From contig JAKLZA010000082.1 of NCBI GenBank assembly GCA_030704615.1, positions 1 through 6,805 of the forward strand: 6,805 bases of DNA, in the 5' to 3' direction. Below are positions 1-6,805 of this stretch, in pieces; the stretch's first letter is position 1, and every line of letters starts with the position of its first letter. The notes below the pieces were generated by a model. It was given only the letters and a program-made list of their open reading frames with translations. It had not been told where the DNA came from and did not search any database. The stretch is from Takakia lepidozioides. Taxonomy: Eukaryota; Plantae; Bryophyta. The translations under genes were made by a program, and so were the position numbers.

Positions 1-266
1 ACTGCAGCTAAGCACTCTCCCTCATATGAGCTGTACTTAGCCTCTGCAGCGTTGTTCAAGCGGCTAGCGTAAGCCACTACGAACTCTCTTCCCTCATCAT
101 CCACCTGTGTGAGCACCGCTCCAAGCCCCAACATGCTCCAATCCGTATGCAGCTGAAAGGGACGCCCCCTGATAGGTCGTCTCAAGATAGGCGCCGAGGT
201 CAACCTCGCCTTGAGCTCTTGAAAAGCTCGTTCCTGCTCATCTTCCCACTGCCACTCCTGGTCCAC
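1..266 (-). pseudogene. pol: Ty3/Gypsy pol fragment (RT-RNase H connection plus N-terminal half of RNase H) of a host element, interrupted by insertion at about 267 and running off the window start
   Basis: Manual translation of the reverse complement (codons 266 down to 3) has no stops: VDQEWQWEDEQERAFQELKARLTSAPILRRPIRGRPFQLHTDWSMLGLGAVLTQVDDEGREFVVAYASRLNNAAEAKYSSYEGECLAA. It matches the Ty3 pattern W..EQ..AF..LK..L.SAPIL, F.LHTDxS..GLGAVL.Q, VAYASR, AE..YS..E.E.LA. Catalytic Asp codon at 141-143 and Glu at 15-17. Upstream the frame loses homology and stops at 288-290. Confidence 0.95.
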
Positions 267-1133
267 TGTTAGAGGACTGTAGGGGACTTAGACACTTATA
301 CGGGATCTGTAGGGTACCCTTAATTTTGCACAGACTGAGACCAACAGGAGCCTTAGGGGTGACAGCAGCGCACTGTAGAGGGGGGTTACACAGTTGTCAC
401 AGCCGACACAGCCCGTCACAGTCGTCACAGCCCACACAGCCGACACAGCCCACACAGCCGACACAGCCAGTCACAGCCCGACACAGCCAAACACAGCCAG
501 TCACCGCTTGACACAGCTGTCACGATAATAGGGAACGACTGTGGGGAACAACACCTGTGAAGGGAACATGTTAGTTCACAGACGACGGTTAGAGAGGGAA
601 ACGGTTAGAACCGCGGATAGGAGGATAAAGGGAGAAACGGGGAATGAAGGAGATCATCATTATTCGGGGAGGACTTCTGAGTCAGGCTGGAGCGGAGATC
701 GGAGGCAAGAGATGGAGAGCACGGTGAAGGAGAAAAGAGGATTAGTAGATGCTTGTTATATGCAAAGCTGTAGTGATATTGGAGAGCAGATTAGAGACAT
801 AATGGCTTCGGCCTGATACCTGATAAATCATAATCTGATACTTATAAGATACAATCACACTGTGTAGAGAGATCTGAGAGAAGCTGTGGATTGAATGGAT
901 GAGTGAAGAAAACTGATAGATTGATGAAGCAAACTAATACTTAATTATCAATGGTAAGGTAGCTAAGATGAATGCGAAAAGGGAAACAAATAGGAAACAC
1001 CCCCATGATACACTAGCTGTAGGTCATGACTGATTGTTCTGCGCGGGCTGAGTACTTAGAGATTTCCAACTCTTCTATCTTGGAGTTTCCGCCTCGGATA
1101 GCGAAGGGATGGGTGAGTAAAAGCCGCGCGACA
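267..1133 (+). repeat. Putative 5' LTR (3' end well supported; 5' end at 267 or alternatively 518)
   Basis: TGTTAG begins at 267, where the minus-strand pol homology ends. The segment ends ...CGCGACA at 1133, 2 nt before the PBS. The alternative start TGTCACG (518-524) is a 6/7 inverted match to CGCGACA. No second LTR is in the window to confirm. Confidence 0.65.
388..523 (+). repeat. Tandem array of about 14 units of 9-10 bp, consensus (A/T)CACAGCC(N)G
   Basis: Units read directly: ACACAGTTG TCACAGCCG ACACAGCCCG TCACAGTCG TCACAGCCC ACACAGCCG ACACAGCCC ACACAGCCG ACACAGCCAG TCACAGCCCG ACACAGCCAA ACACAGCCAG TCACCGCTTG ACACAGCTG TCAC. Confidence 0.95.
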
Positions 1134-1721
1134 TTTGGCGACCATACTGGGGACCTGGGACATGAACAACCAGATGTGACAGGCATCTGGTGGGATCATG
1201 GTGGTTGGACCATTAAAGAATTTGAAGTGAATCAAATTCCCTGTGGAACGAAGGAAGAAAGATTGTCCAAACGATTCTTTCAAAGGTTCTTGGAATTGCC
1301 AGACGGATGTAAAGAAAATATTCTTAAACGAGTGCATGATGCTGATCCAGAATGGGGTCTGGAGAAAGGAGTGATAAAGATTTATCAGGTAGCCTGTAGA
1401 GGAAGAGCACGTTGGTTACCAACATTGGTTTATGTGATAGCATTGCTATCCATTAAACGAGTAGAGTTTGAAGGCTGGGAAGAAAGAAAGGTGAATGTTT
1501 ATACTCATATGCATGAAGAGCTTGTACTGGTAAAGAATTGGATTCCAAAGGATATTTTGTGGATCAAACTCACACCAAGAACAGCTTTTCAGACTTGTTT
1601 GCCATATGGTTATATGGTAACGGAGACTTCAAGTATAGCCAAGGGTGCATTGAAGCTTGAAAGAAACCCAGGCATATACGAGAGATATTACAGAAGAGAG
1701 TTTTGGTTGTTGCCACATTAA
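1026..1721 (+). CDS. Extra ORF upstream of gag, 231 aa, unknown function, F-box-like motif at aa 88-130
   Basis: Uninterrupted 231 codons with globular composition (10 Trp), on the same strand and frame as gag. It contains FLELPDGCKENILKRV...VACRGRARW. The true start is uncertain because the only early in-frame ATG lies in the LTR. Confidence 0.6.
   Translation: MTDCSARAEYLEISNSSILEFPPRIAKGWVSKSRATFGDHTGDLGHEQPDVTGIWWDHGGWTIKEFEVNQIPCGTKEERLSKRFFQRFLELPDGCKENILKRVHDADPEWGLEKGVIKIYQVACRGRARWLPTLVYVIALLSIKRVEFEGWEERKVNVYTHMHEELVLVKNWIPKDILWIKLTPRTAFQTCLPYGYMVTETSSIAKGALKLERNPGIYERYYRREFWLLPH
1136..1154 (+). promoter_or_regulatory. Primer-binding site, probably for tRNA-Arg
   Basis: TGGCGACCATACTGGGGAC starts with TGG (complement of tRNA CCA) and follows CA plus TT. 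It resembles the tRNA-Arg PBS of Ogre/Tat elements (TGGCGACTC.GCTGGGGA, from memory). Confidence 0.8.
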
Positions 1722-1742
1722 AAGAAATGAAAGACATGGGAC

Positions 1743-3700
1743 ATGAGTGATGAAAGAGAAGCTAGACGACAGAGATATTCATCAAAAAGAGAAAGCTATC
1801 TGAAAGCTAATTATCCATATCTTTGGGAGAGAGGAATAGACATAGGGGAATCATCTGGACCTCTCACACCATCAAGATCAAAAAGTGCATCACCTATACC
1901 GGAAGAACTAGAGTTGGATGCCACTCCTTCTGTTTCTTTGCAAGAAAGATTAAGGGAATTGGTACAGGAAGAAGATCAATCACGAGGTGAAAGATCTGAG
2001 GTACATCCTTGGATAAAAGACTTGACAGAAATCTTTGATAAGAGTTGGCATGGAACACCAAAAGCAGGAACTCCAGTTTCTGAAGCAGAAGATGAAGAAG
2101 GAGAAGAGGATGTGGCAGAGCCAACGGAGAGTTCAGACTCTCCAACACCATTACAGTTGAGTTACATGAGTGAAGAAGAAACCCAAGGGCAGAACTTGGA
2201 GGATGAAAACAGAAAAGAGAAGAAGAAATTAGAAGAGGAAGAATATGAAGAAGTAGACCCAACAGCTGAGGTTGAGACTACAACCAGGACATCCCAACCC
2301 GTTGGACCTGGATCAAGTGGAGCACTTGGATCACAGGCCAACGAAGGTGTCGGCTCAGGGGGATCAGGCGGGCTGCCTGGATCTGGCTCTGGGGGGACAG
2401 GGAGTGTGGGAAGTAGTGCAACTGAAGCTGGGAATACTGTGAATATCGTGGGACCAGAAGCAAGGAGTGCTCAAGGGCCACCACTTGGTGGAAGATCCAC
2501 CACAAAAACAACAGGTCCAGAAGGACCAGCACCAGCAAGGGTGCCAGCACCTGTCAGTGGGCAGAAGGTAGGGCCACAGATGGCGTTACAACCAACACGG
2601 GCAAAACCACCCTTTCCAATATATTCAGGAAAAGGGGATCCCGATGTACACATTAGCCAATTTGAGCACATGTGTATAGTGAACAATGAGAATGGCGATG
2701 ATGCCAAGATGAGACTGTTTCCTTGTTCACTTATCAAGAAAGCAAGTGAATGGTATGCAAGATTCCCTGATAATCATTTCCTAACCTGGAATGGCTTGAA
2801 TACAGCATTTCGAAATAGGTTCAGGACAAGTAAAACTGAGGATGAAGTGTATGGAAGTTTACAACAGCTGAAGCAGAAGAAGCATGAAACTGTTGAAGAG
2901 TATATGGAGAAGATGGAATTGATGATGAAAAACTGGCTGCAGTACCAGCGCCCGGTTTACAGAAGACTTGGTTTGTGAGTGGATTAAGACCAGAGTTGCA
3001 AAAGAAAGTGGATATGTTACCCATAACACAGTGGAGGAGGCATTTGAAACTGCGAACAGAATTGAGCAATTGGGAATGCTCAGGAGAGAGAAAAAAAAAA
3101 GATGAGGACTCTGAGGATGAGTCAGATAGATGAAGAAGAAGAGAAAGAGAACTAAAAAGAAAGAGTAAGAGAGAAAGGAAAGTTGAAGAGGGATAACTAT
3201 GAAAAAAAAAATTGAAGAAATCTTGAAGAAGTATGCCACAGAGGCTGCAACACATTGGAGGAAGGGTGTATGGTGTGCAAAAGTGCCAGAATGAAGGCCA
3301 TACCACCACAGAATGCCACATGAAGGAGAAACACTGTACTATCTGTAAAATGGATAACCATTCTACTGAGAATTGTTACTACAACAGAAGGACAGCTGCA
3401 AGAGAACCTAGGCAAGTAAGGGTGCATCAGGTGCAGCCCCAGCCAAGAAGAAACAATGATCAGGACCACTATGGTAGGTCTGGTGGTTATAACAATGGCA
3501 TGGAAGGGAGAGGTAATTCAAGGGGGAATTACCAAGGAAATTCCAGAGGCAACTATCAGGGTAATCCAAGGGGAATTACCAGCCTGGAATCAGGATTATA
3601 GAAATAATCCAAGACAGACCAAGGGCGAGGACCCAATGGTGAAGAGCTATGTTACTATTGTAATCAGCCAGGACATCGCAAGCAGCCTGTGTTCATTTCT
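1743..3700 (+). CDS. gag: Gag: acidic and Gly/Ser/Pro-rich N-terminus, retrotransposon capsid domain (about 2613-3075), Lys/Glu-rich tract, CCHC knuckles; frameshifted after about 2930
   Basis: FPIYSGKGDPDVHISQFE...KMRLFPCSLIKKASEWY...TWNGLNTAFRNRF...LQQLKQKKHETVEEYMEK is a typical retrotransposon Gag core. Adding one A to the run at 2928-2932 continues as KLAAVPAPGLQKTWFVSGLRPELQKKV, the F..GL.P.L motif. Confidence 0.9.
3274..3376 (+). other. Two tandem CX2CX4HX4C zinc knuckles
   Basis: CAKCQNEGHTTTEC (3274-3316, one extra A near 3280) and CTICKMDNHSTENC (3335-3376, intact). Confidence 0.9.
3510..3585 (+). repeat. Coding 24-bp degenerate repeat encoding (RGNYQGNS/P) about 3 times
   Basis: Translation RGNSRGNYQGNSRGNYQGNPRG, followed by AATTACCAG (NYQ) after a 1-nt shift. 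Confidence 0.85.
3650..3692 (+). other. Third CCHC zinc knuckle
   Basis: TGT TAC TAT TGT AAT CAG CCA GGA CAT = CYYCNQPGH. The final Cys (TGT at 3688 or 3690) needs a 1-nt indel. Confidence 0.75.
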
Positions 3701-4265
3701 GGATAAGACACCAGAATGAGATGAGAGCTCCTGTGAATGAGGCCAGTTGGTGGCAGCTCACATGGTTAGGCCATGTGTTGTAGAGAAGTAAGTACAATGA
3801 TAGTAACAAGAAGTAAAGCCAAACTAATACCTCCAGTAGAGAGGAAGAAGATGAGATGGAAGAAGGGCAATGATATGCCTGAAGATGAGAGGACTTGGAA
3901 AGATGAGAAGGAACTGCACAAGGAAGTGGCAGATACTATAAGGGAAATGCAAAAGAGTACTGATATTTCTTGTGGCAGATTCCTCTGATTCGGATGGAGA
4001 AAAAGAGGGAGTGAGGAAGAAAGAAAAAAAAAAGATGCAGACATGCAAAGTAATGAAGAGACTTTGGCTGCAGTAATATGTCAGACCAAAGCAGAAATTA
4101 CCATTGGACAGCTATTAGCTGTGGCACCTTATTGTAGGCACAGGCTGTATCAGGCAATCAATCGAATTGCCCAAGAGACAGGAAACACAGACCTGAACAG
4201 CAAGGTGACCAGTTATAATGTGAAGCCGGAAGGGGCGAGAACCAGTCATGGACTTTGATGATTCT

Positions 4266-4585
4266 ATGCCAGTAATCCAATTGAGAATTGGAAGCACAGA
4301 ACTAACTGATGTACTGATAGATGGTGGTTCTGGAGTAAATATCATGACAGACCAATTAAGGAAGAAGCTTGGTCTAAGTAACATGAAACCAGCCCCATTT
4401 ACAGTAACAATGGCAGATCAAAGAAGTGTGCAGCCATTGGGATAATAAGAGGAGTTAAGATACAGATACAGAAAATGATCTTTATGATCACAGTAACTGT
4501 ATTAAAAATGGATGAAGTCATGGAGGCTTACTCCTTATTATTGGGACGTCCGTGGCTGAAACAGGCCAGGGTATTCCATGACTGG
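4266..4585 (+). pseudogene. pol: Aspartic protease domain, frameshift near 4440
   Basis: VLIDGGSGVNIM (Asp codon 4320-4322), FTVTMADQRSVQPLG and YSLLLGRPWL. Confidence 0.93.
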
Positions 4586-5023
4586 AATTCTCAGTTATTA
4601 ACCGTGCATAATGGGATACACGAGATACAAATTACCACAAAGAAATCTAGTAGATTACCCGCTACAAGAAGACCTCGAGGAGTCAGAGAGTATGACTGGA
4701 GAGGAGGACTGGATGAGGAGCAGGAAGCTACCCTATTTGCTGCACACCCAGAGTGGGAGCAGGTGGCGGAGATGCGGCTGGAAAGCCTAAGTTGTTTGAG
4801 AGGTATCTGCTGTGGTGTAGTGACAGCAACACCAACTGAAGAGAAGAGGAAACTAGCATTTACCCATCACATTTCTATGAAGAGAGAGAAGGAGAAATAG
4901 AAATCCTAGAAGAACCAGCCACTGTGAGCTTACAGGATGAAGTGGTGACTGGTTGGACAATCACAGCTGATGAGCAGGTGAGAGAAGTAAATGTGGGAAC
5001 TCAGAGGAACCGAGTGATAGGAT

Positions 5024-6075
5024 GTGAAAGTAGGAGCTGATTTGGAACCGGAATTCTTCGAAGAAGCTAAAAGCTTGTTCATCAAATACAGAGATGTATT
5101 TGCTTGGAGCTATGAGGATCTAAAAGGGATACCACCTGAAGTCTGTCAGCATAAGATTGAACTGGAACCAGGGTCAGTACCAATCAAGCAGGCGAGGTAT
5201 AGAATGAATCCCACTACGCACAGAAGGTTGGAGAAGAGATAAAGAAGTTAGCTGAGGCTAAGTTTATATACCAATAGAGTATACAACTTGGTTGTCACCA
5301 TTGTTGTAATAGTTCCAAGAAGAATCAGAAGAATGGCACAATGAGAGTATGTGTGAACTATAAGAAGCTGAATGCTTGTACGAAGAAAGATCCTTTCCCT
5401 TTGCCATTCACAGAAGAAGCAGTATTAGACACTGTGGCAGGCCATGAGATGTACTCATTCATGGAGGGCTTCAGTGGTTATAATCAAGTGCAAGTGGCAG
5501 AAGAAGACCAAGGGAAAACAGCTTTCATCACAGACTGGGGGGCTTATGCATACAAAGTCATGCCCTTTGGACTGTAATGCACCAGCGACCGTTCAGAGAG
5601 TGATAGTGAATCTTTTATGAGTATCTGGATGATTCATGCAGTGTTTTTGGATGATTTCAGTGTGTACAGCTCTAGAATGAGCACTTGCATAAATGGAGAG
5701 TTATGCCTGGCCAGATGCAGGATGAGAGGTCTGGGCTTGAATCCAGAGAAGTGTACTTTCTGTGTTGAACTCAGGGGTGCTTCTGGGGACACATTGTGTG
5801 TAAGAAGGGACTTCTTGTGGATCCCAGGAAGACAGAGTCCATTAAAGTCTCTCCACCACCGTGAATGTTAAGAGTTTAAGGAGATTCCTTGGGCAAACCA
5901 GTTATTATGAAGAAGATTGTGCAAAAGGTATGCACAAATAGCAGCACCATTGAGAAGCTTCTGAAGGAAGAAAGGATGCCAGTGTTTGCCTGGACAGCTG
6001 AATGTCAACAGGCGTTTGAGGAACTTACACTGTCAGTAACAACTACACCTGTGCTGATTAACCCCCACTGGCATG
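5024..6075 (+). pseudogene. pol: Reverse transcriptase and connection domain, multiple frameshifts
   Basis: YRDVFAWSYEDLKGIPPEVCQHKIEL, MRVCVNYKKLN..TKKDPFPLPF, YSFMEGFSGYNQV, KTAFITDWGAYAYKVMPFGL, VFLDDF (FLDD at 5644-5655), GLNPEKCTF and FAWTAECQQAFEEL. Confidence 0.96.
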
Positions 6076-6077
6076 TA

Positions 6078-6451
6078 GTATTTCATGTTCACTGCGATGC
6101 ATCAGGAGAAGCGTGGGTGCGGTGTTAGCCCAGAATGTTACAGGGAATATAGATTCACCTGTGTACTATGCTAGCCGGTTGATGAACAGTGCTGAGAGAG
6201 GAACTATTATAGACAACGGAAAAAAAGAGAAGCATTGGCAATGATTATGCAGTCAAGAAATCAGGCATTACCTATTGGGAAGAAAGTTTATGTTTTATGT
6301 GGATCACCAGGCTCTGATATATCTGGTGAACAAACCTTTGATAAGTGGAAGGAGGATAGCGAGGGTGGTTAAGAATCTTGCATGAGTTTGAGTTCGAGGT
6401 CTTTACAAGCATGGCCGTTTGCATCTTGTGGCAGATCATTGGTCACGACTA
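6078..6451 (+). pseudogene. pol: Ty3-type RNase H domain, frameshifted
   Basis: VFHVHCDASG (Asp 6096-6098), AVLAQ, SPVYYASRLMNSAER, EALAM, RHYLLGRKFMFYVDHQALIYLVNKP and HLVADHWSRL. Confidence 0.93.
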
Positions 6452-6689
6452 ACAACAGGAGAGGCCGCAACAGGAGTGGACGACAGTTACATGATGCGAG
6501 TTTATTTATAATGGAGGGTGCAGGAAGTGCCCAGATGAATGGTTAGAATGAATGGTTTAGATTGGCAGTGGCCAATCAGATACTACCTTGCTATGGTCAG
6601 TGCCCACCTAGTTATGGTAAGGGAGCAGAGGAGAAAGAGGACTGCTATCACAGCTTTACCTTATATATTGGTAGGAAAGCAGAATGTAT

Positions 6690-6805
6690 AGTTAGGACTG
6701 ATGGAGTACTAAAACGATGCCTTGTACCACCATGAAGTAAATAAAGTCTTGGAGGAAGTCAATAAAGGGATGTGGCTGGAGGTCCTTTTGGCGAAGAGAC
6801 TACAG
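6690..6805 (+). pseudogene. pol: Start of integrase (lead-in to the H2C2 zinc-binding domain), truncated by the window end
   Basis: Across frames: TDGVLKRCL, HEVNKVLEEVNKG, AGGPFGEETT. This matches the pattern DG.LRRC...E...IL.E.H.G..GGHF, but both His positions read Asn and Pro. Confidence 0.75.

What the first reader, a model, noticed from the sequence alone, without database searches (positions are those of the whole stretch)
1026..1721. Retrotransposon accessory ORF with an F-box-like motif, a candidate element-encoded SCF adaptor or anti-silencing factor
Seen: an intact 231-aa ORF with globular composition lies before gag, and I recognise no retroelement domain in it. Residues 88-130 (nt 1287-1415) read FLELPDGCKENILKRV...IYQVACRGRARW, which resembles the F-box consensus (F/L)xxLPxxxxxxILxxL...VC+xW. 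About 100 aa of unknown C-terminal sequence follow. Known: Ogre/Tat elements carry extra ORFs of unknown function 5' of gag. Plant viruses use minimal F-box proteins (polerovirus P0 against AGO1, nanovirus Clink) to hijack SKP1. Inference: this element may encode a host-ubiquitin-ligase adaptor. The motif is short and imperfect (G-C-K where E-I-L is usual), so the idea is speculative.
Basis: partly seen in the sequence, partly recalled or inferred. Interest (0 to 1): 0.8.

Follow-up and report, generated by a model that had tools for sequence, protein, structure and literature searches.

The report
Selected orphan gene before retrotransposon gag
A very abundant plant gypsy-type jumping gene carries a real extra gene in front of gag, and selection has kept its last 148 amino acids, but no test here shows it is an F-box protein and its function is unknown.

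Summary
The 231-codon ORF at 1026-1721 exists exactly as described, and so does the quoted motif string. It sits in a dead Ty3/gypsy copy that is nested inside another gypsy element.

The ORF is not a chance frame. The family is hugely abundant in one plant (55,392 contig pieces on 3 kb). Of the 11 best-supported variant sites shown inside the ORF, 7 are synonymous against 27.5% expected. All 6 sites in codons 84-231 are synonymous (P = 4.5e-4), against 1 of 5 in codons 1-83. No common indel falls in the ORF.

The likely LTR end is ...ACA at 1132. The ORF then runs through a TGG-type primer-binding site at 1135.

The F-box reading has no support:
- Pfam finds nothing at E up to 10.
- An exhaustive search of 1.8 billion proteins gives only two repeat-protein artefacts.
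- PDB and Atlas searches are blank.
- The LPxx(I/L) core reads LPDGC, and the LP-to-Trp spacing is wrong.
- AlphaFold models have low confidence.
- SKP1 binding could not be tested.

This is a family-specific orphan "extra ORF", a known kind of feature in plant LTR retrotransposons. The scan had already found the same ORF on other pieces of this genome, and one follow-up reached the same conclusion.

The parts
263..1132 (+). 5' LTR of the element (TGT...ACA), about 870 bp. It holds the ORF0 start codon in its U5 end.
   Evidence: The flank 1-260 is a reverse-strand RT/RNase H piece of another element. Other copies diverge just before 267 into a purine-rich PPT-like run (loose ends). The end reads ...GCGCGACA, then TT, then TGG. 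Two joints have their left edge at 1132/1133, but their short sides are only 26-29 nt, so they are suggestive only. Earlier notes on other copies say the same.
398..498 (+). 9-bp tandem repeat (CACAGCCGA, 10.8 copies) inside the LTR, variable in length between copies
   Evidence: Tandem Repeats Finder. Many joints fall within 329-498.
1135..1152 (+). Candidate primer-binding site (starts TGGCGACC), 2 nt after the LTR's terminal CA, inside ORF0 codons 37-43. The tRNA was not identified, and it is not the tRNA-Met type.
   Evidence: Sequence read. Rule of TGG 0-5 bp after the LTR end from PMC6317226.
1026..1721 (+). ORF0, 231 codons plus TAA: the extra ORF of the finding
1026..1274 (+). ORF0 codons 1-83, overlapping the LTR end, the PBS and the leader. 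No sign of protein-level constraint.
   Evidence: 1 of 5 shown family variants is synonymous, 27% expected
1275..1718 (+). ORF0 codons 84-231: the selected part, basic (pI 9.1), 4% Trp, no transmembrane segment
   Evidence: 6 of 6 shown variants synonymous, P = 4.5e-4. Fisher test against the N-part, P = 0.015. No indel at 10% or more of contigs. Composition.
1287..1415 (+). The stretch read as F-box-like (FLELPDGCKENILKRV...VACRGRARW)
   Evidence: String present. No F-box profile match. The three variants shown here (1307, 1328, 1391) are all synonymous.
1719..1742 (+). Spacer between ORF0 and gag. The two ORFs share a frame but are separated by TAA and TGA, and all three frames are closed.
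1743..2978 (+). gag ORF: 290 aa of acidic and Gly/Ser-rich low-complexity sequence, then the capsid domain (aa 324-396, nt 2712-2930). The frame is lost near 2940.
   Evidence: Pfam PF03732, E 3.4e-11. 9 of 14 variants synonymous. Frame map.
2940..6805 (+). Broken remainder: gag C-terminus, zinc knuckle, protease, RT and RNase H in pieces, with at least 12 frame breaks or stops. The window ends before integrase.
   Evidence: Pfam hits on fragments. Frame map.

Best explanation
ORF0 is a genuine, family-wide extra gene of a very abundant plant Ty3/gypsy retrotransposon. It is an orphan 'extra ORF, 5' forward' in the sense of Neumann et al. 2019. Shown: its AUG lies in the U5 end of the LTR, so it is on the genomic RNA if transcription starts upstream of 1026. 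The frame runs through the candidate primer-binding site. Only the last 148 codons behave as protein under purifying selection, at a level like gag. Nothing similar exists in the searched protein libraries. Inferred: the functional module is the basic, Trp-rich C-terminal domain, and the first 83 residues are a tolerated leader whose DNA serves as LTR end, PBS and leader. Selection on copies of a retrotransposon mainly sees functions that help the encoding RNA itself. The likeliest role is therefore an element-specific helper of its own RNA or particle (RNA binding, export, packaging or assembly). As the first long cistron, 21 nt before a gag that cannot be reached by read-through, it may also set how much Gag is made. 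The biochemical activity is unknown.
For: The ORF is real and longer than chance allows. The family is huge: 55,392 contig pieces on 261-3300 in one run. 7 of 11 shown variants in ORF0 are synonymous against 27.5% expected (P = 0.013). Only 1 of 11 is synonymous in each of the other two frames, and gag as positive control gives 9 of 14. Codons 84-231 give 6 of 6 synonymous (P = 4.5e-4) against 1 of 5 in codons 1-83. No common indel lies between 651 and 2214, whereas the gag low-complexity part and the 3' region have several. The LTR end plus TGG lies at 1131-1137. There is no Pfam, NCBIfam, PDB, Atlas or protein-library relative. Orphan extra ORFs are common in plant LTR retrotransposons: 314 unrelated groups in Ty3/gypsy, with only 21% showing a known domain (PMC6317226). 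Rice Retrosat2, RIRE3 and RIRE8 carry an orphan ORF0 (PMC3485330). Unchecked notes of this scan report the same 696-nt ORF on several other pieces of the genome.
Against: The selection test rests on only 11 variant sites. The tool showed 40 of 120, and contigs are not independent copies. No full copies could be fetched, so no proper dN/dS was possible. No RNA run holds the stretch, so transcription, the start site and translation are unshown. There is no in-frame Met between codons 2 and 161, so how the conserved part is expressed depends on an AUG inside the LTR that sits behind several short upstream ORFs. The proposed role (RNA or particle helper, Gag dosage) is inference from position alone. 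This copy itself is dead.
Confidence: 0.65

Rival explanations
1. ORF0 is a minimal F-box or F-box-like adaptor that binds host SKP1 and redirects an SCF ligase, for example against a silencing factor as polerovirus P0 does.
For: The string F..LP......IL..V is present at residues 88-103 and is rare in shuffles (0.25%). It lies at the start of the selected part, and the three shown variants inside it are synonymous. Viral F-box-like motifs are too short for Pfam, so a blank scan does not exclude them (PMC6410027, PMC6784205). There are four GW/WG dipeptides against 1.4 expected (P = 0.04). Unchecked notes report F-box-like mini-genes in LTRs of other families in this genome.
Against: No F-box family matches at E up to 10 on the whole protein or on pieces. 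The LPxxI/L core reads LPDGC. Trp lies 38 or 18 residues after the Pro instead of about 26. The part meant to be helices 2-3 is rich in beta-branched residues and is modelled as a hairpin, at low confidence. The motif was picked after the fact. An earlier follow-up on another copy also found nothing testable.
Confidence: 0.07
2. ORF0 is a former or conditional N-terminal part of Gag, or acts mainly as a long upstream ORF whose translation (not its protein) tunes Gag synthesis.
For: ORF0 and gag are in the same frame only 7 codons apart. ORF0 starts in the LTR and covers the PBS, as the gag ORF of yeast Ty1 does (my own knowledge). It is the first long cistron on the RNA.
Against: Two stops (TAA, TGA) lie between them and all three frames are closed, so read-through or a single frameshift cannot join them. 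No variant at these stops is among those shown. A purely regulatory upstream ORF would not show 6 of 6 synonymous changes in its C-terminal 148 codons.
Confidence: 0.13
3. ORF0 is not functional. The frame is open only because the family is young, and the synonymous excess is a sampling accident or a by-product of RNA-level constraint.
For: Only 11 variants were available. 17,227 of the laid contigs are 99% or more alike, so many copies are young. There is no homolog, no confident fold and no RNA evidence.
Against: The codon-position pattern is frame-specific and matches gag's. RNA structure does not give three-base periodicity. The 231-codon frame is open even in this copy, which carries 12 or more breaks in the 3.9 kb downstream. 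Other copies with the same 696-nt ORF were noted on other pieces of the genome (unchecked).
Confidence: 0.12

Closest known systems
Orphan ORF0 of rice Retrosat2 / RIRE3 / RIRE8 (Ty3/gypsy), PMC3485330
   Same: An extra sense ORF between the 5' LTR and gag-pol of an abundant plant gypsy family. It has no homolog outside the family, no assignable function, and is under weaker constraint than gag-pol.
   Different: Those elements are over 12 kb with LTRs over 3 kb. The LTR here is about 0.87 kb, and this ORF starts inside the LTR and crosses the PBS. Sequence relatedness could not be tested directly because their sequences were not on hand. The exhaustive protein search found no relative.
Extra ORFs (eORF-5'F) of Ogre/Tat/Athila-type plant elements, Neumann et al. 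2019 (PMC6317226); review PMC7264820
   Same: Position and orientation, presence across copies of a family, and usually no known domain.
   Different: None of the domains typical of those lineages (plant mobile domain, Transposase_28, Athila ORF-1) matches. At 231 codons it is below that survey's 250-codon cut-off. The lineage of this element was not determined.
F-box domain proteins and viral F-box-like suppressors (polerovirus P0, crinivirus p22; PMC6410027, PMC6784205)
   Same: A Leu-Pro followed by a hydrophobic helix-like stretch (IL..V), and a small accessory protein of a replicating genetic parasite of plants.
   Different: No profile match, LPxxC instead of LPxxI/L, wrong spacing to Trp, no evidence of a three-helix fold, and SKP1 binding untested.
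Gag ORF of yeast Ty1, which starts in the 5' LTR and contains the PBS (my own knowledge, not checked here)
   Same: The first ORF on the genomic RNA begins in U5 and is read through the primer-binding site.
   Different: In Ty1 that ORF is gag itself. Here it is a separate ORF that ends 21 nt before gag.
CERV protein of C. elegans Cer1 (PMC10309623, abstract seen)
   Same: An element-encoded accessory protein besides Gag and Pol that serves the element's own genomic RNA. This is the kind of role proposed here.
   Different: No sequence similarity was found. The parallel is functional speculation only.

Membership tests
F-box domain (Pfam PF00646 / PF12937 and relatives) | Significant match to an F-box profile HMM | tested here: not met
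   hmmscan against Pfam-A at E up to 1 and up to 10, on the whole protein and on three pieces including residues 78-141: no family at all
F-box domain (Pfam PF00646 / PF12937 and relatives) | [quoted passage not shown] | tested here: not met
   Residues 91-95 read LPDGC
F-box domain (Pfam PF00646 / PF12937 and relatives) | Conserved Trp about 26 residues after the Pro (spacing recalled from canonical F-boxes such as Skp2) | tested here: not met
   P92 to W130 is 38 residues and P92 to W110 is 18. The consensus spacing comes from memory, not from a tool.
F-box domain (Pfam PF00646 / PF12937 and relatives) | Three-helix fold | tested here: inconclusive
   Single-sequence AlphaFold2: pLDDT 34 for the whole protein and 40 for residues 84-231. 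Helix 93-105 is followed by strands 116-125 and 132-141. Confidence is too low to decide.
F-box domain (Pfam PF00646 / PF12937 and relatives) | Binding to SKP1 | not testable with these tools
References for complex prediction are limited to bacteria, archaea and phages.
Extra ORF of plant LTR retrotransposons (eORF-5'F / aORF) | Sense ORF between the 5' LTR and gag, not part of the polyprotein | tested here: met
   ORF0 at 1026-1721 and gag from 1743, separated by two stops with all frames closed
Extra ORF of plant LTR retrotransposons (eORF-5'F / aORF) | Present and conserved in most copies of the family, not a one-off transduction (PMC7264820) | tested here: met
   All 30 bins of 261-3300 are covered by tens of thousands of contigs. 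There is no common indel in ORF0, and synonymous changes are in excess. Limited to 11 variant sites.
Ogre / Retand / Athila-type eORF domains | Plant mobile domain (PF10536), Transposase_28 (PF04195) or Athila ORF-1 (PF03078) | tested here: not met
   No Pfam match
N-terminal extension of Gag | Continuous reading frame with gag, or a single recoding site | tested here: not met
   TAA at 1719 and TGA at 1728 in the shared frame, and the other two frames are also closed before 1751

The most novel reading that the evidence does not exclude
The selected C-terminal domain of ORF0 is a highly diverged, P0-like host-interaction module. An LP-containing SKP1-docking helix plus GW/WG contacts would let a retrotransposon turn the host's ubiquitin or autophagy machinery against its own silencing. 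It might be related to the F-box-like mini-genes that other notes report in LTRs of other families of this genome.
Probability: 0.07. Interest if true: 0.75.

Novelty: new member of a known kind. Interest (0 to 1): 0.3.

Why it matters
One of the most abundant repeat families of this plant genome keeps a gene of unknown function under selection, in the position read first on its RNA. Extra ORFs of plant retrotransposons are common but none has an established function. An abundant family with a clearly selected 148-aa module is a practical case for finding one. The finding also shows that a short LP...IL string is not enough to call an F-box.

Tried and rejected
- **Homolog searches for ORF0.** The word-index search was blank. 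The exhaustive phmmer search of 1.84 billion representatives gave two hits. Both are repeat proteins whose E-values come from summing many weak matches. P0001 is a 59-aa tandem repeat matched on 18 residues. P0002 is an LRR-like repeat protein whose best single HSP scores 32.7 bits. I rejected both as chance.
- **Other libraries.** NCBIfam, PDB sequences at E up to 10 and Atlas features on the whole protein and on residues 84-231 (scores 0.75-0.76, chance level) gave nothing.
- **Fetching other copies.**
  - The exact-protein look-up was blank.
  - Protein-pattern scans of metagenome and viral contigs were blank.
  - A 30-mer DNA scan of both collections was blank. No codon alignment was therefore possible.
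- **gag searches for lineage and relatives.** One search was swamped by low-complexity words and the capsid-only search was blank. The lineage is undetermined.
- **AlphaFold2.** Models of the whole ORF and of residues 84-231 had pLDDT 34 and 40. I did not run fold searches because such models give meaningless matches.
- **SKP1 complex prediction.** Not run, because no admissible SKP1 sequence was available.
- **Other checks.** Rfam found nothing in the window. There is no internal paralogy of ORF0 within the window and no transmembrane segment (maximum KD19 1.27), so it is not env-like.
- **Splice-site reading.** GTGAGT at 1111 joined to an AG near 1285 would be out of frame, so I dropped it.

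Full report
**What is in the window**

Bases 1-260 encode, on the reverse strand, an uninterrupted 86-residue RT/RNase H piece of another Ty3/gypsy element. The element of interest is nested into it. From about 263 the window holds:
- an LTR;
- the 231-codon ORF at 1026-1721;
- after 21 nt, a 411-codon gag ORF whose residues 324-396 match Pfam Retrotrans_gag at E 3.4e-11;
- zinc-knuckle, protease, RT and RNase H fragments spread over all three frames, with at least 12 stops or frame changes between 2940 and 6805.

This copy is therefore dead, and the window ends before integrase and the 3' LTR.

**Check of the observation**

The coordinates, length and quoted residues are correct. A stop-free run this long appears in 0.8% of shuffled windows and 0.05% of shuffles of the local kilobase. 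The other two forward frames over the same span carry 17 and 15 stops.

- The sequence ...GCGCGACA TT TGGCGACC... at 1124-1142 has the form of an LTR end (CA), a 2-nt spacer and a TGG-type primer-binding site (rule in PMC6317226).
  - Two joints in the read-laying table have their left edge at 1132/1133, although their short sides (26-29 nt) make them only suggestive.
  - Contigs of other copies diverge just before 267 into a purine-rich, PPT-like run. This fits an LTR start near 263-267.
  - The ORF's AUG and its first 36 or so codons therefore lie in the U5 end of the LTR, and codons 37-43 cover the PBS.
  - Three unchecked notes of this scan on other copies say the same.
- ORF0 and gag share a reading frame but are separated by TAA and TGA, and all three frames are closed between them.

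**Is it a gene?**

One run of the likely source organism laid 55,392 contig pieces on 261-3300, most of them 90-99% alike. The family is therefore extremely abundant. The tool showed the 40 best-supported of 120 variable places.

| Region | Variants shown | Synonymous | Expected | P |
|---|---|---|---|---|
| ORF0, its own frame | 11 | 7 | 27.5% | 0.013 |
| ORF0, each other frame | 11 | 1 | – | – |
| gag (positive control) | 14 | 9 | 28% | 0.005 |
| ORF0 codons 1-83 | 5 | 1 | 27.1% | – |
| ORF0 codons 84-231 | 6 | 6 | 27.7% | 4.5e-4 |

In ORF0, 8 of the 11 variants are at third positions (P = 0.008), and none makes a stop. The four replacements (A6E, D43E, E67D, R83Q) all fall in the first 83 codons.

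I split the ORF at codon 84 because an earlier follow-up on another copy had named that boundary. Fisher's test between the two parts gives P = 0.015. No indel shared by 10% of contigs lies between 651 and 2214, while gag's low-complexity part and the region after 2927 have several.

The C-terminal 148 codons thus evolved as protein-coding sequence while the family spread.

Limits of this evidence:
- only 11 sites were available;
- contigs are not independent copies;
- no full copies could be fetched;
- no RNA run holds the stretch.

Near-identical contigs in runs labelled as other organisms have depths of only 3-6. They carry the family-majority letters, so they may be carry-over and are not counted as cross-species conservation.

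**Is it an F-box?**

- Pfam gives no family for the whole protein, for residues 78-141, or for either flank, at E up to 10. NCBIfam gives none.
- The exhaustive search of 1.84 billion representatives returns two repeat proteins whose scores are sums of many weak repeats. PDB sequences and Atlas features give nothing.
- The core that papers on viral F-box-like motifs call the most conserved part, LPxxI/L (PMC6784205), reads LPDGC here.
- The Trp matched to the VCKRW tryptophan is 38 residues after the Pro, and the only other candidate is 18 after it. Canonical F-boxes have about 26 (my own knowledge).
- Single-sequence AlphaFold models have pLDDT 34 and 40. The better one has a helix at 93-105 followed by a beta hairpin over the supposed helices 2-3. 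This is too weak to decide.
- The regular expression for the motif is rare in shuffles (0.25%), but it was chosen after seeing the sequence.
- Four GW/WG dipeptides (1.4 expected, P = 0.04) are a faint lead towards AGO-hook-type suppressors.
- SKP1 binding could not be modelled because no admissible SKP1 sequence was available.

The F-box idea is therefore unsupported but not excluded. Validated viral motifs are also invisible to Pfam (PMC6410027).

**What it most likely is**

Extra ORFs are widespread in plant LTR retrotransposons and are extremely heterogeneous. Ty3/gypsy elements alone have 314 mutually unrelated groups, and only 21% show a known domain (PMC6317226; review PMC7264820). Rice Retrosat2, RIRE3 and RIRE8 carry an orphan ORF0 upstream of gag-pol that evolves faster than the polyprotein and has no assigned function (PMC3485330).

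ORF0 here is another such case, with two particular features:
- it starts in the LTR and is read through the PBS, as the gag ORF of yeast Ty1 does (my own knowledge);
- only its C-terminal, basic (pI 9.1), Trp-rich 148 residues are selected.

Defective copies can borrow trans-acting proteins. Persistent purifying selection therefore suggests a function that mainly benefits the encoding RNA or its particle. As the first long cistron, it must also affect how ribosomes reach gag. These last steps are inference.

**Relation to earlier work of the scan**

The same 696-nt ORF was flagged on at least five other pieces of this genome. One follow-up (s1-488515) concluded that it is a selected orphan pre-gag ORF with no testable F-box evidence. 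My independent data agree: variants from public contigs laid on this copy, plus the Pfam, library and fold tests. Another note calls the genome a moss, which I could not check.

**Verdict**

This is a new member of a known kind and of modest interest.

Noticed in passing
window 1-260 (- strand): Uninterrupted 86-aa RT/RNase H segment of a different, more GC-rich (55%) Ty3/gypsy element. The element studied here is inserted into it (nested retrotransposons).
   Followed up: partly
window 398-498: 9-bp tandem repeat (CACAGCCGA, 10.8 copies) in the LTR. Many contigs of other copies skip or add units here, so its length varies within the family.
   Followed up: partly
window 1719-1751: ORF0 and gag share a frame but are separated by TAA and TGA. 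A tiny ORF in another frame (ATG at 1727) ends at a TGA that overlaps the codons just after the gag ATG. How ribosomes reach gag after a 231-codon ORF is unexplained.
   Followed up: partly
window 1743-2610: gag begins with about 290 residues of acidic and Gly/Ser/Thr-rich low-complexity sequence before the capsid domain. In-frame and out-of-frame length variants (3, 5 and 1 nt) cluster at 2214-2220 among copies.
   Followed up: no
window 2927-3279: Indel states that break this copy's gag C-terminus are each shared by a large fraction of family contigs (for example, 68% lack one letter at 3173 and 48% lack two at 3146). Large subfamilies may differ in frame here, or frame-broken copies may have multiplied.
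   Followed up: no
window 3511-3581: 24-bp tandem repeat (3 copies) encoding an Arg/Gly/Asn-rich repeat (RGNSRGNYQGN...) just after the zinc knuckle.
   Followed up: no
window 1108-1116 and 950-957: Two strong 5' splice-site-like strings: G|GTGAGT just before the LTR end, and ATG|GTAAGG. No in-frame acceptor was found and no RNA data were available.
   Followed up: partly
window 1161-2984 (runs X7, X10, X11): Runs labelled as three other organisms hold 99-100% identical pieces at depths of only 3-6, against millions in the main holder. This could be carry-over between samples or very few copies in relatives. It was not resolved.
   Followed up: no
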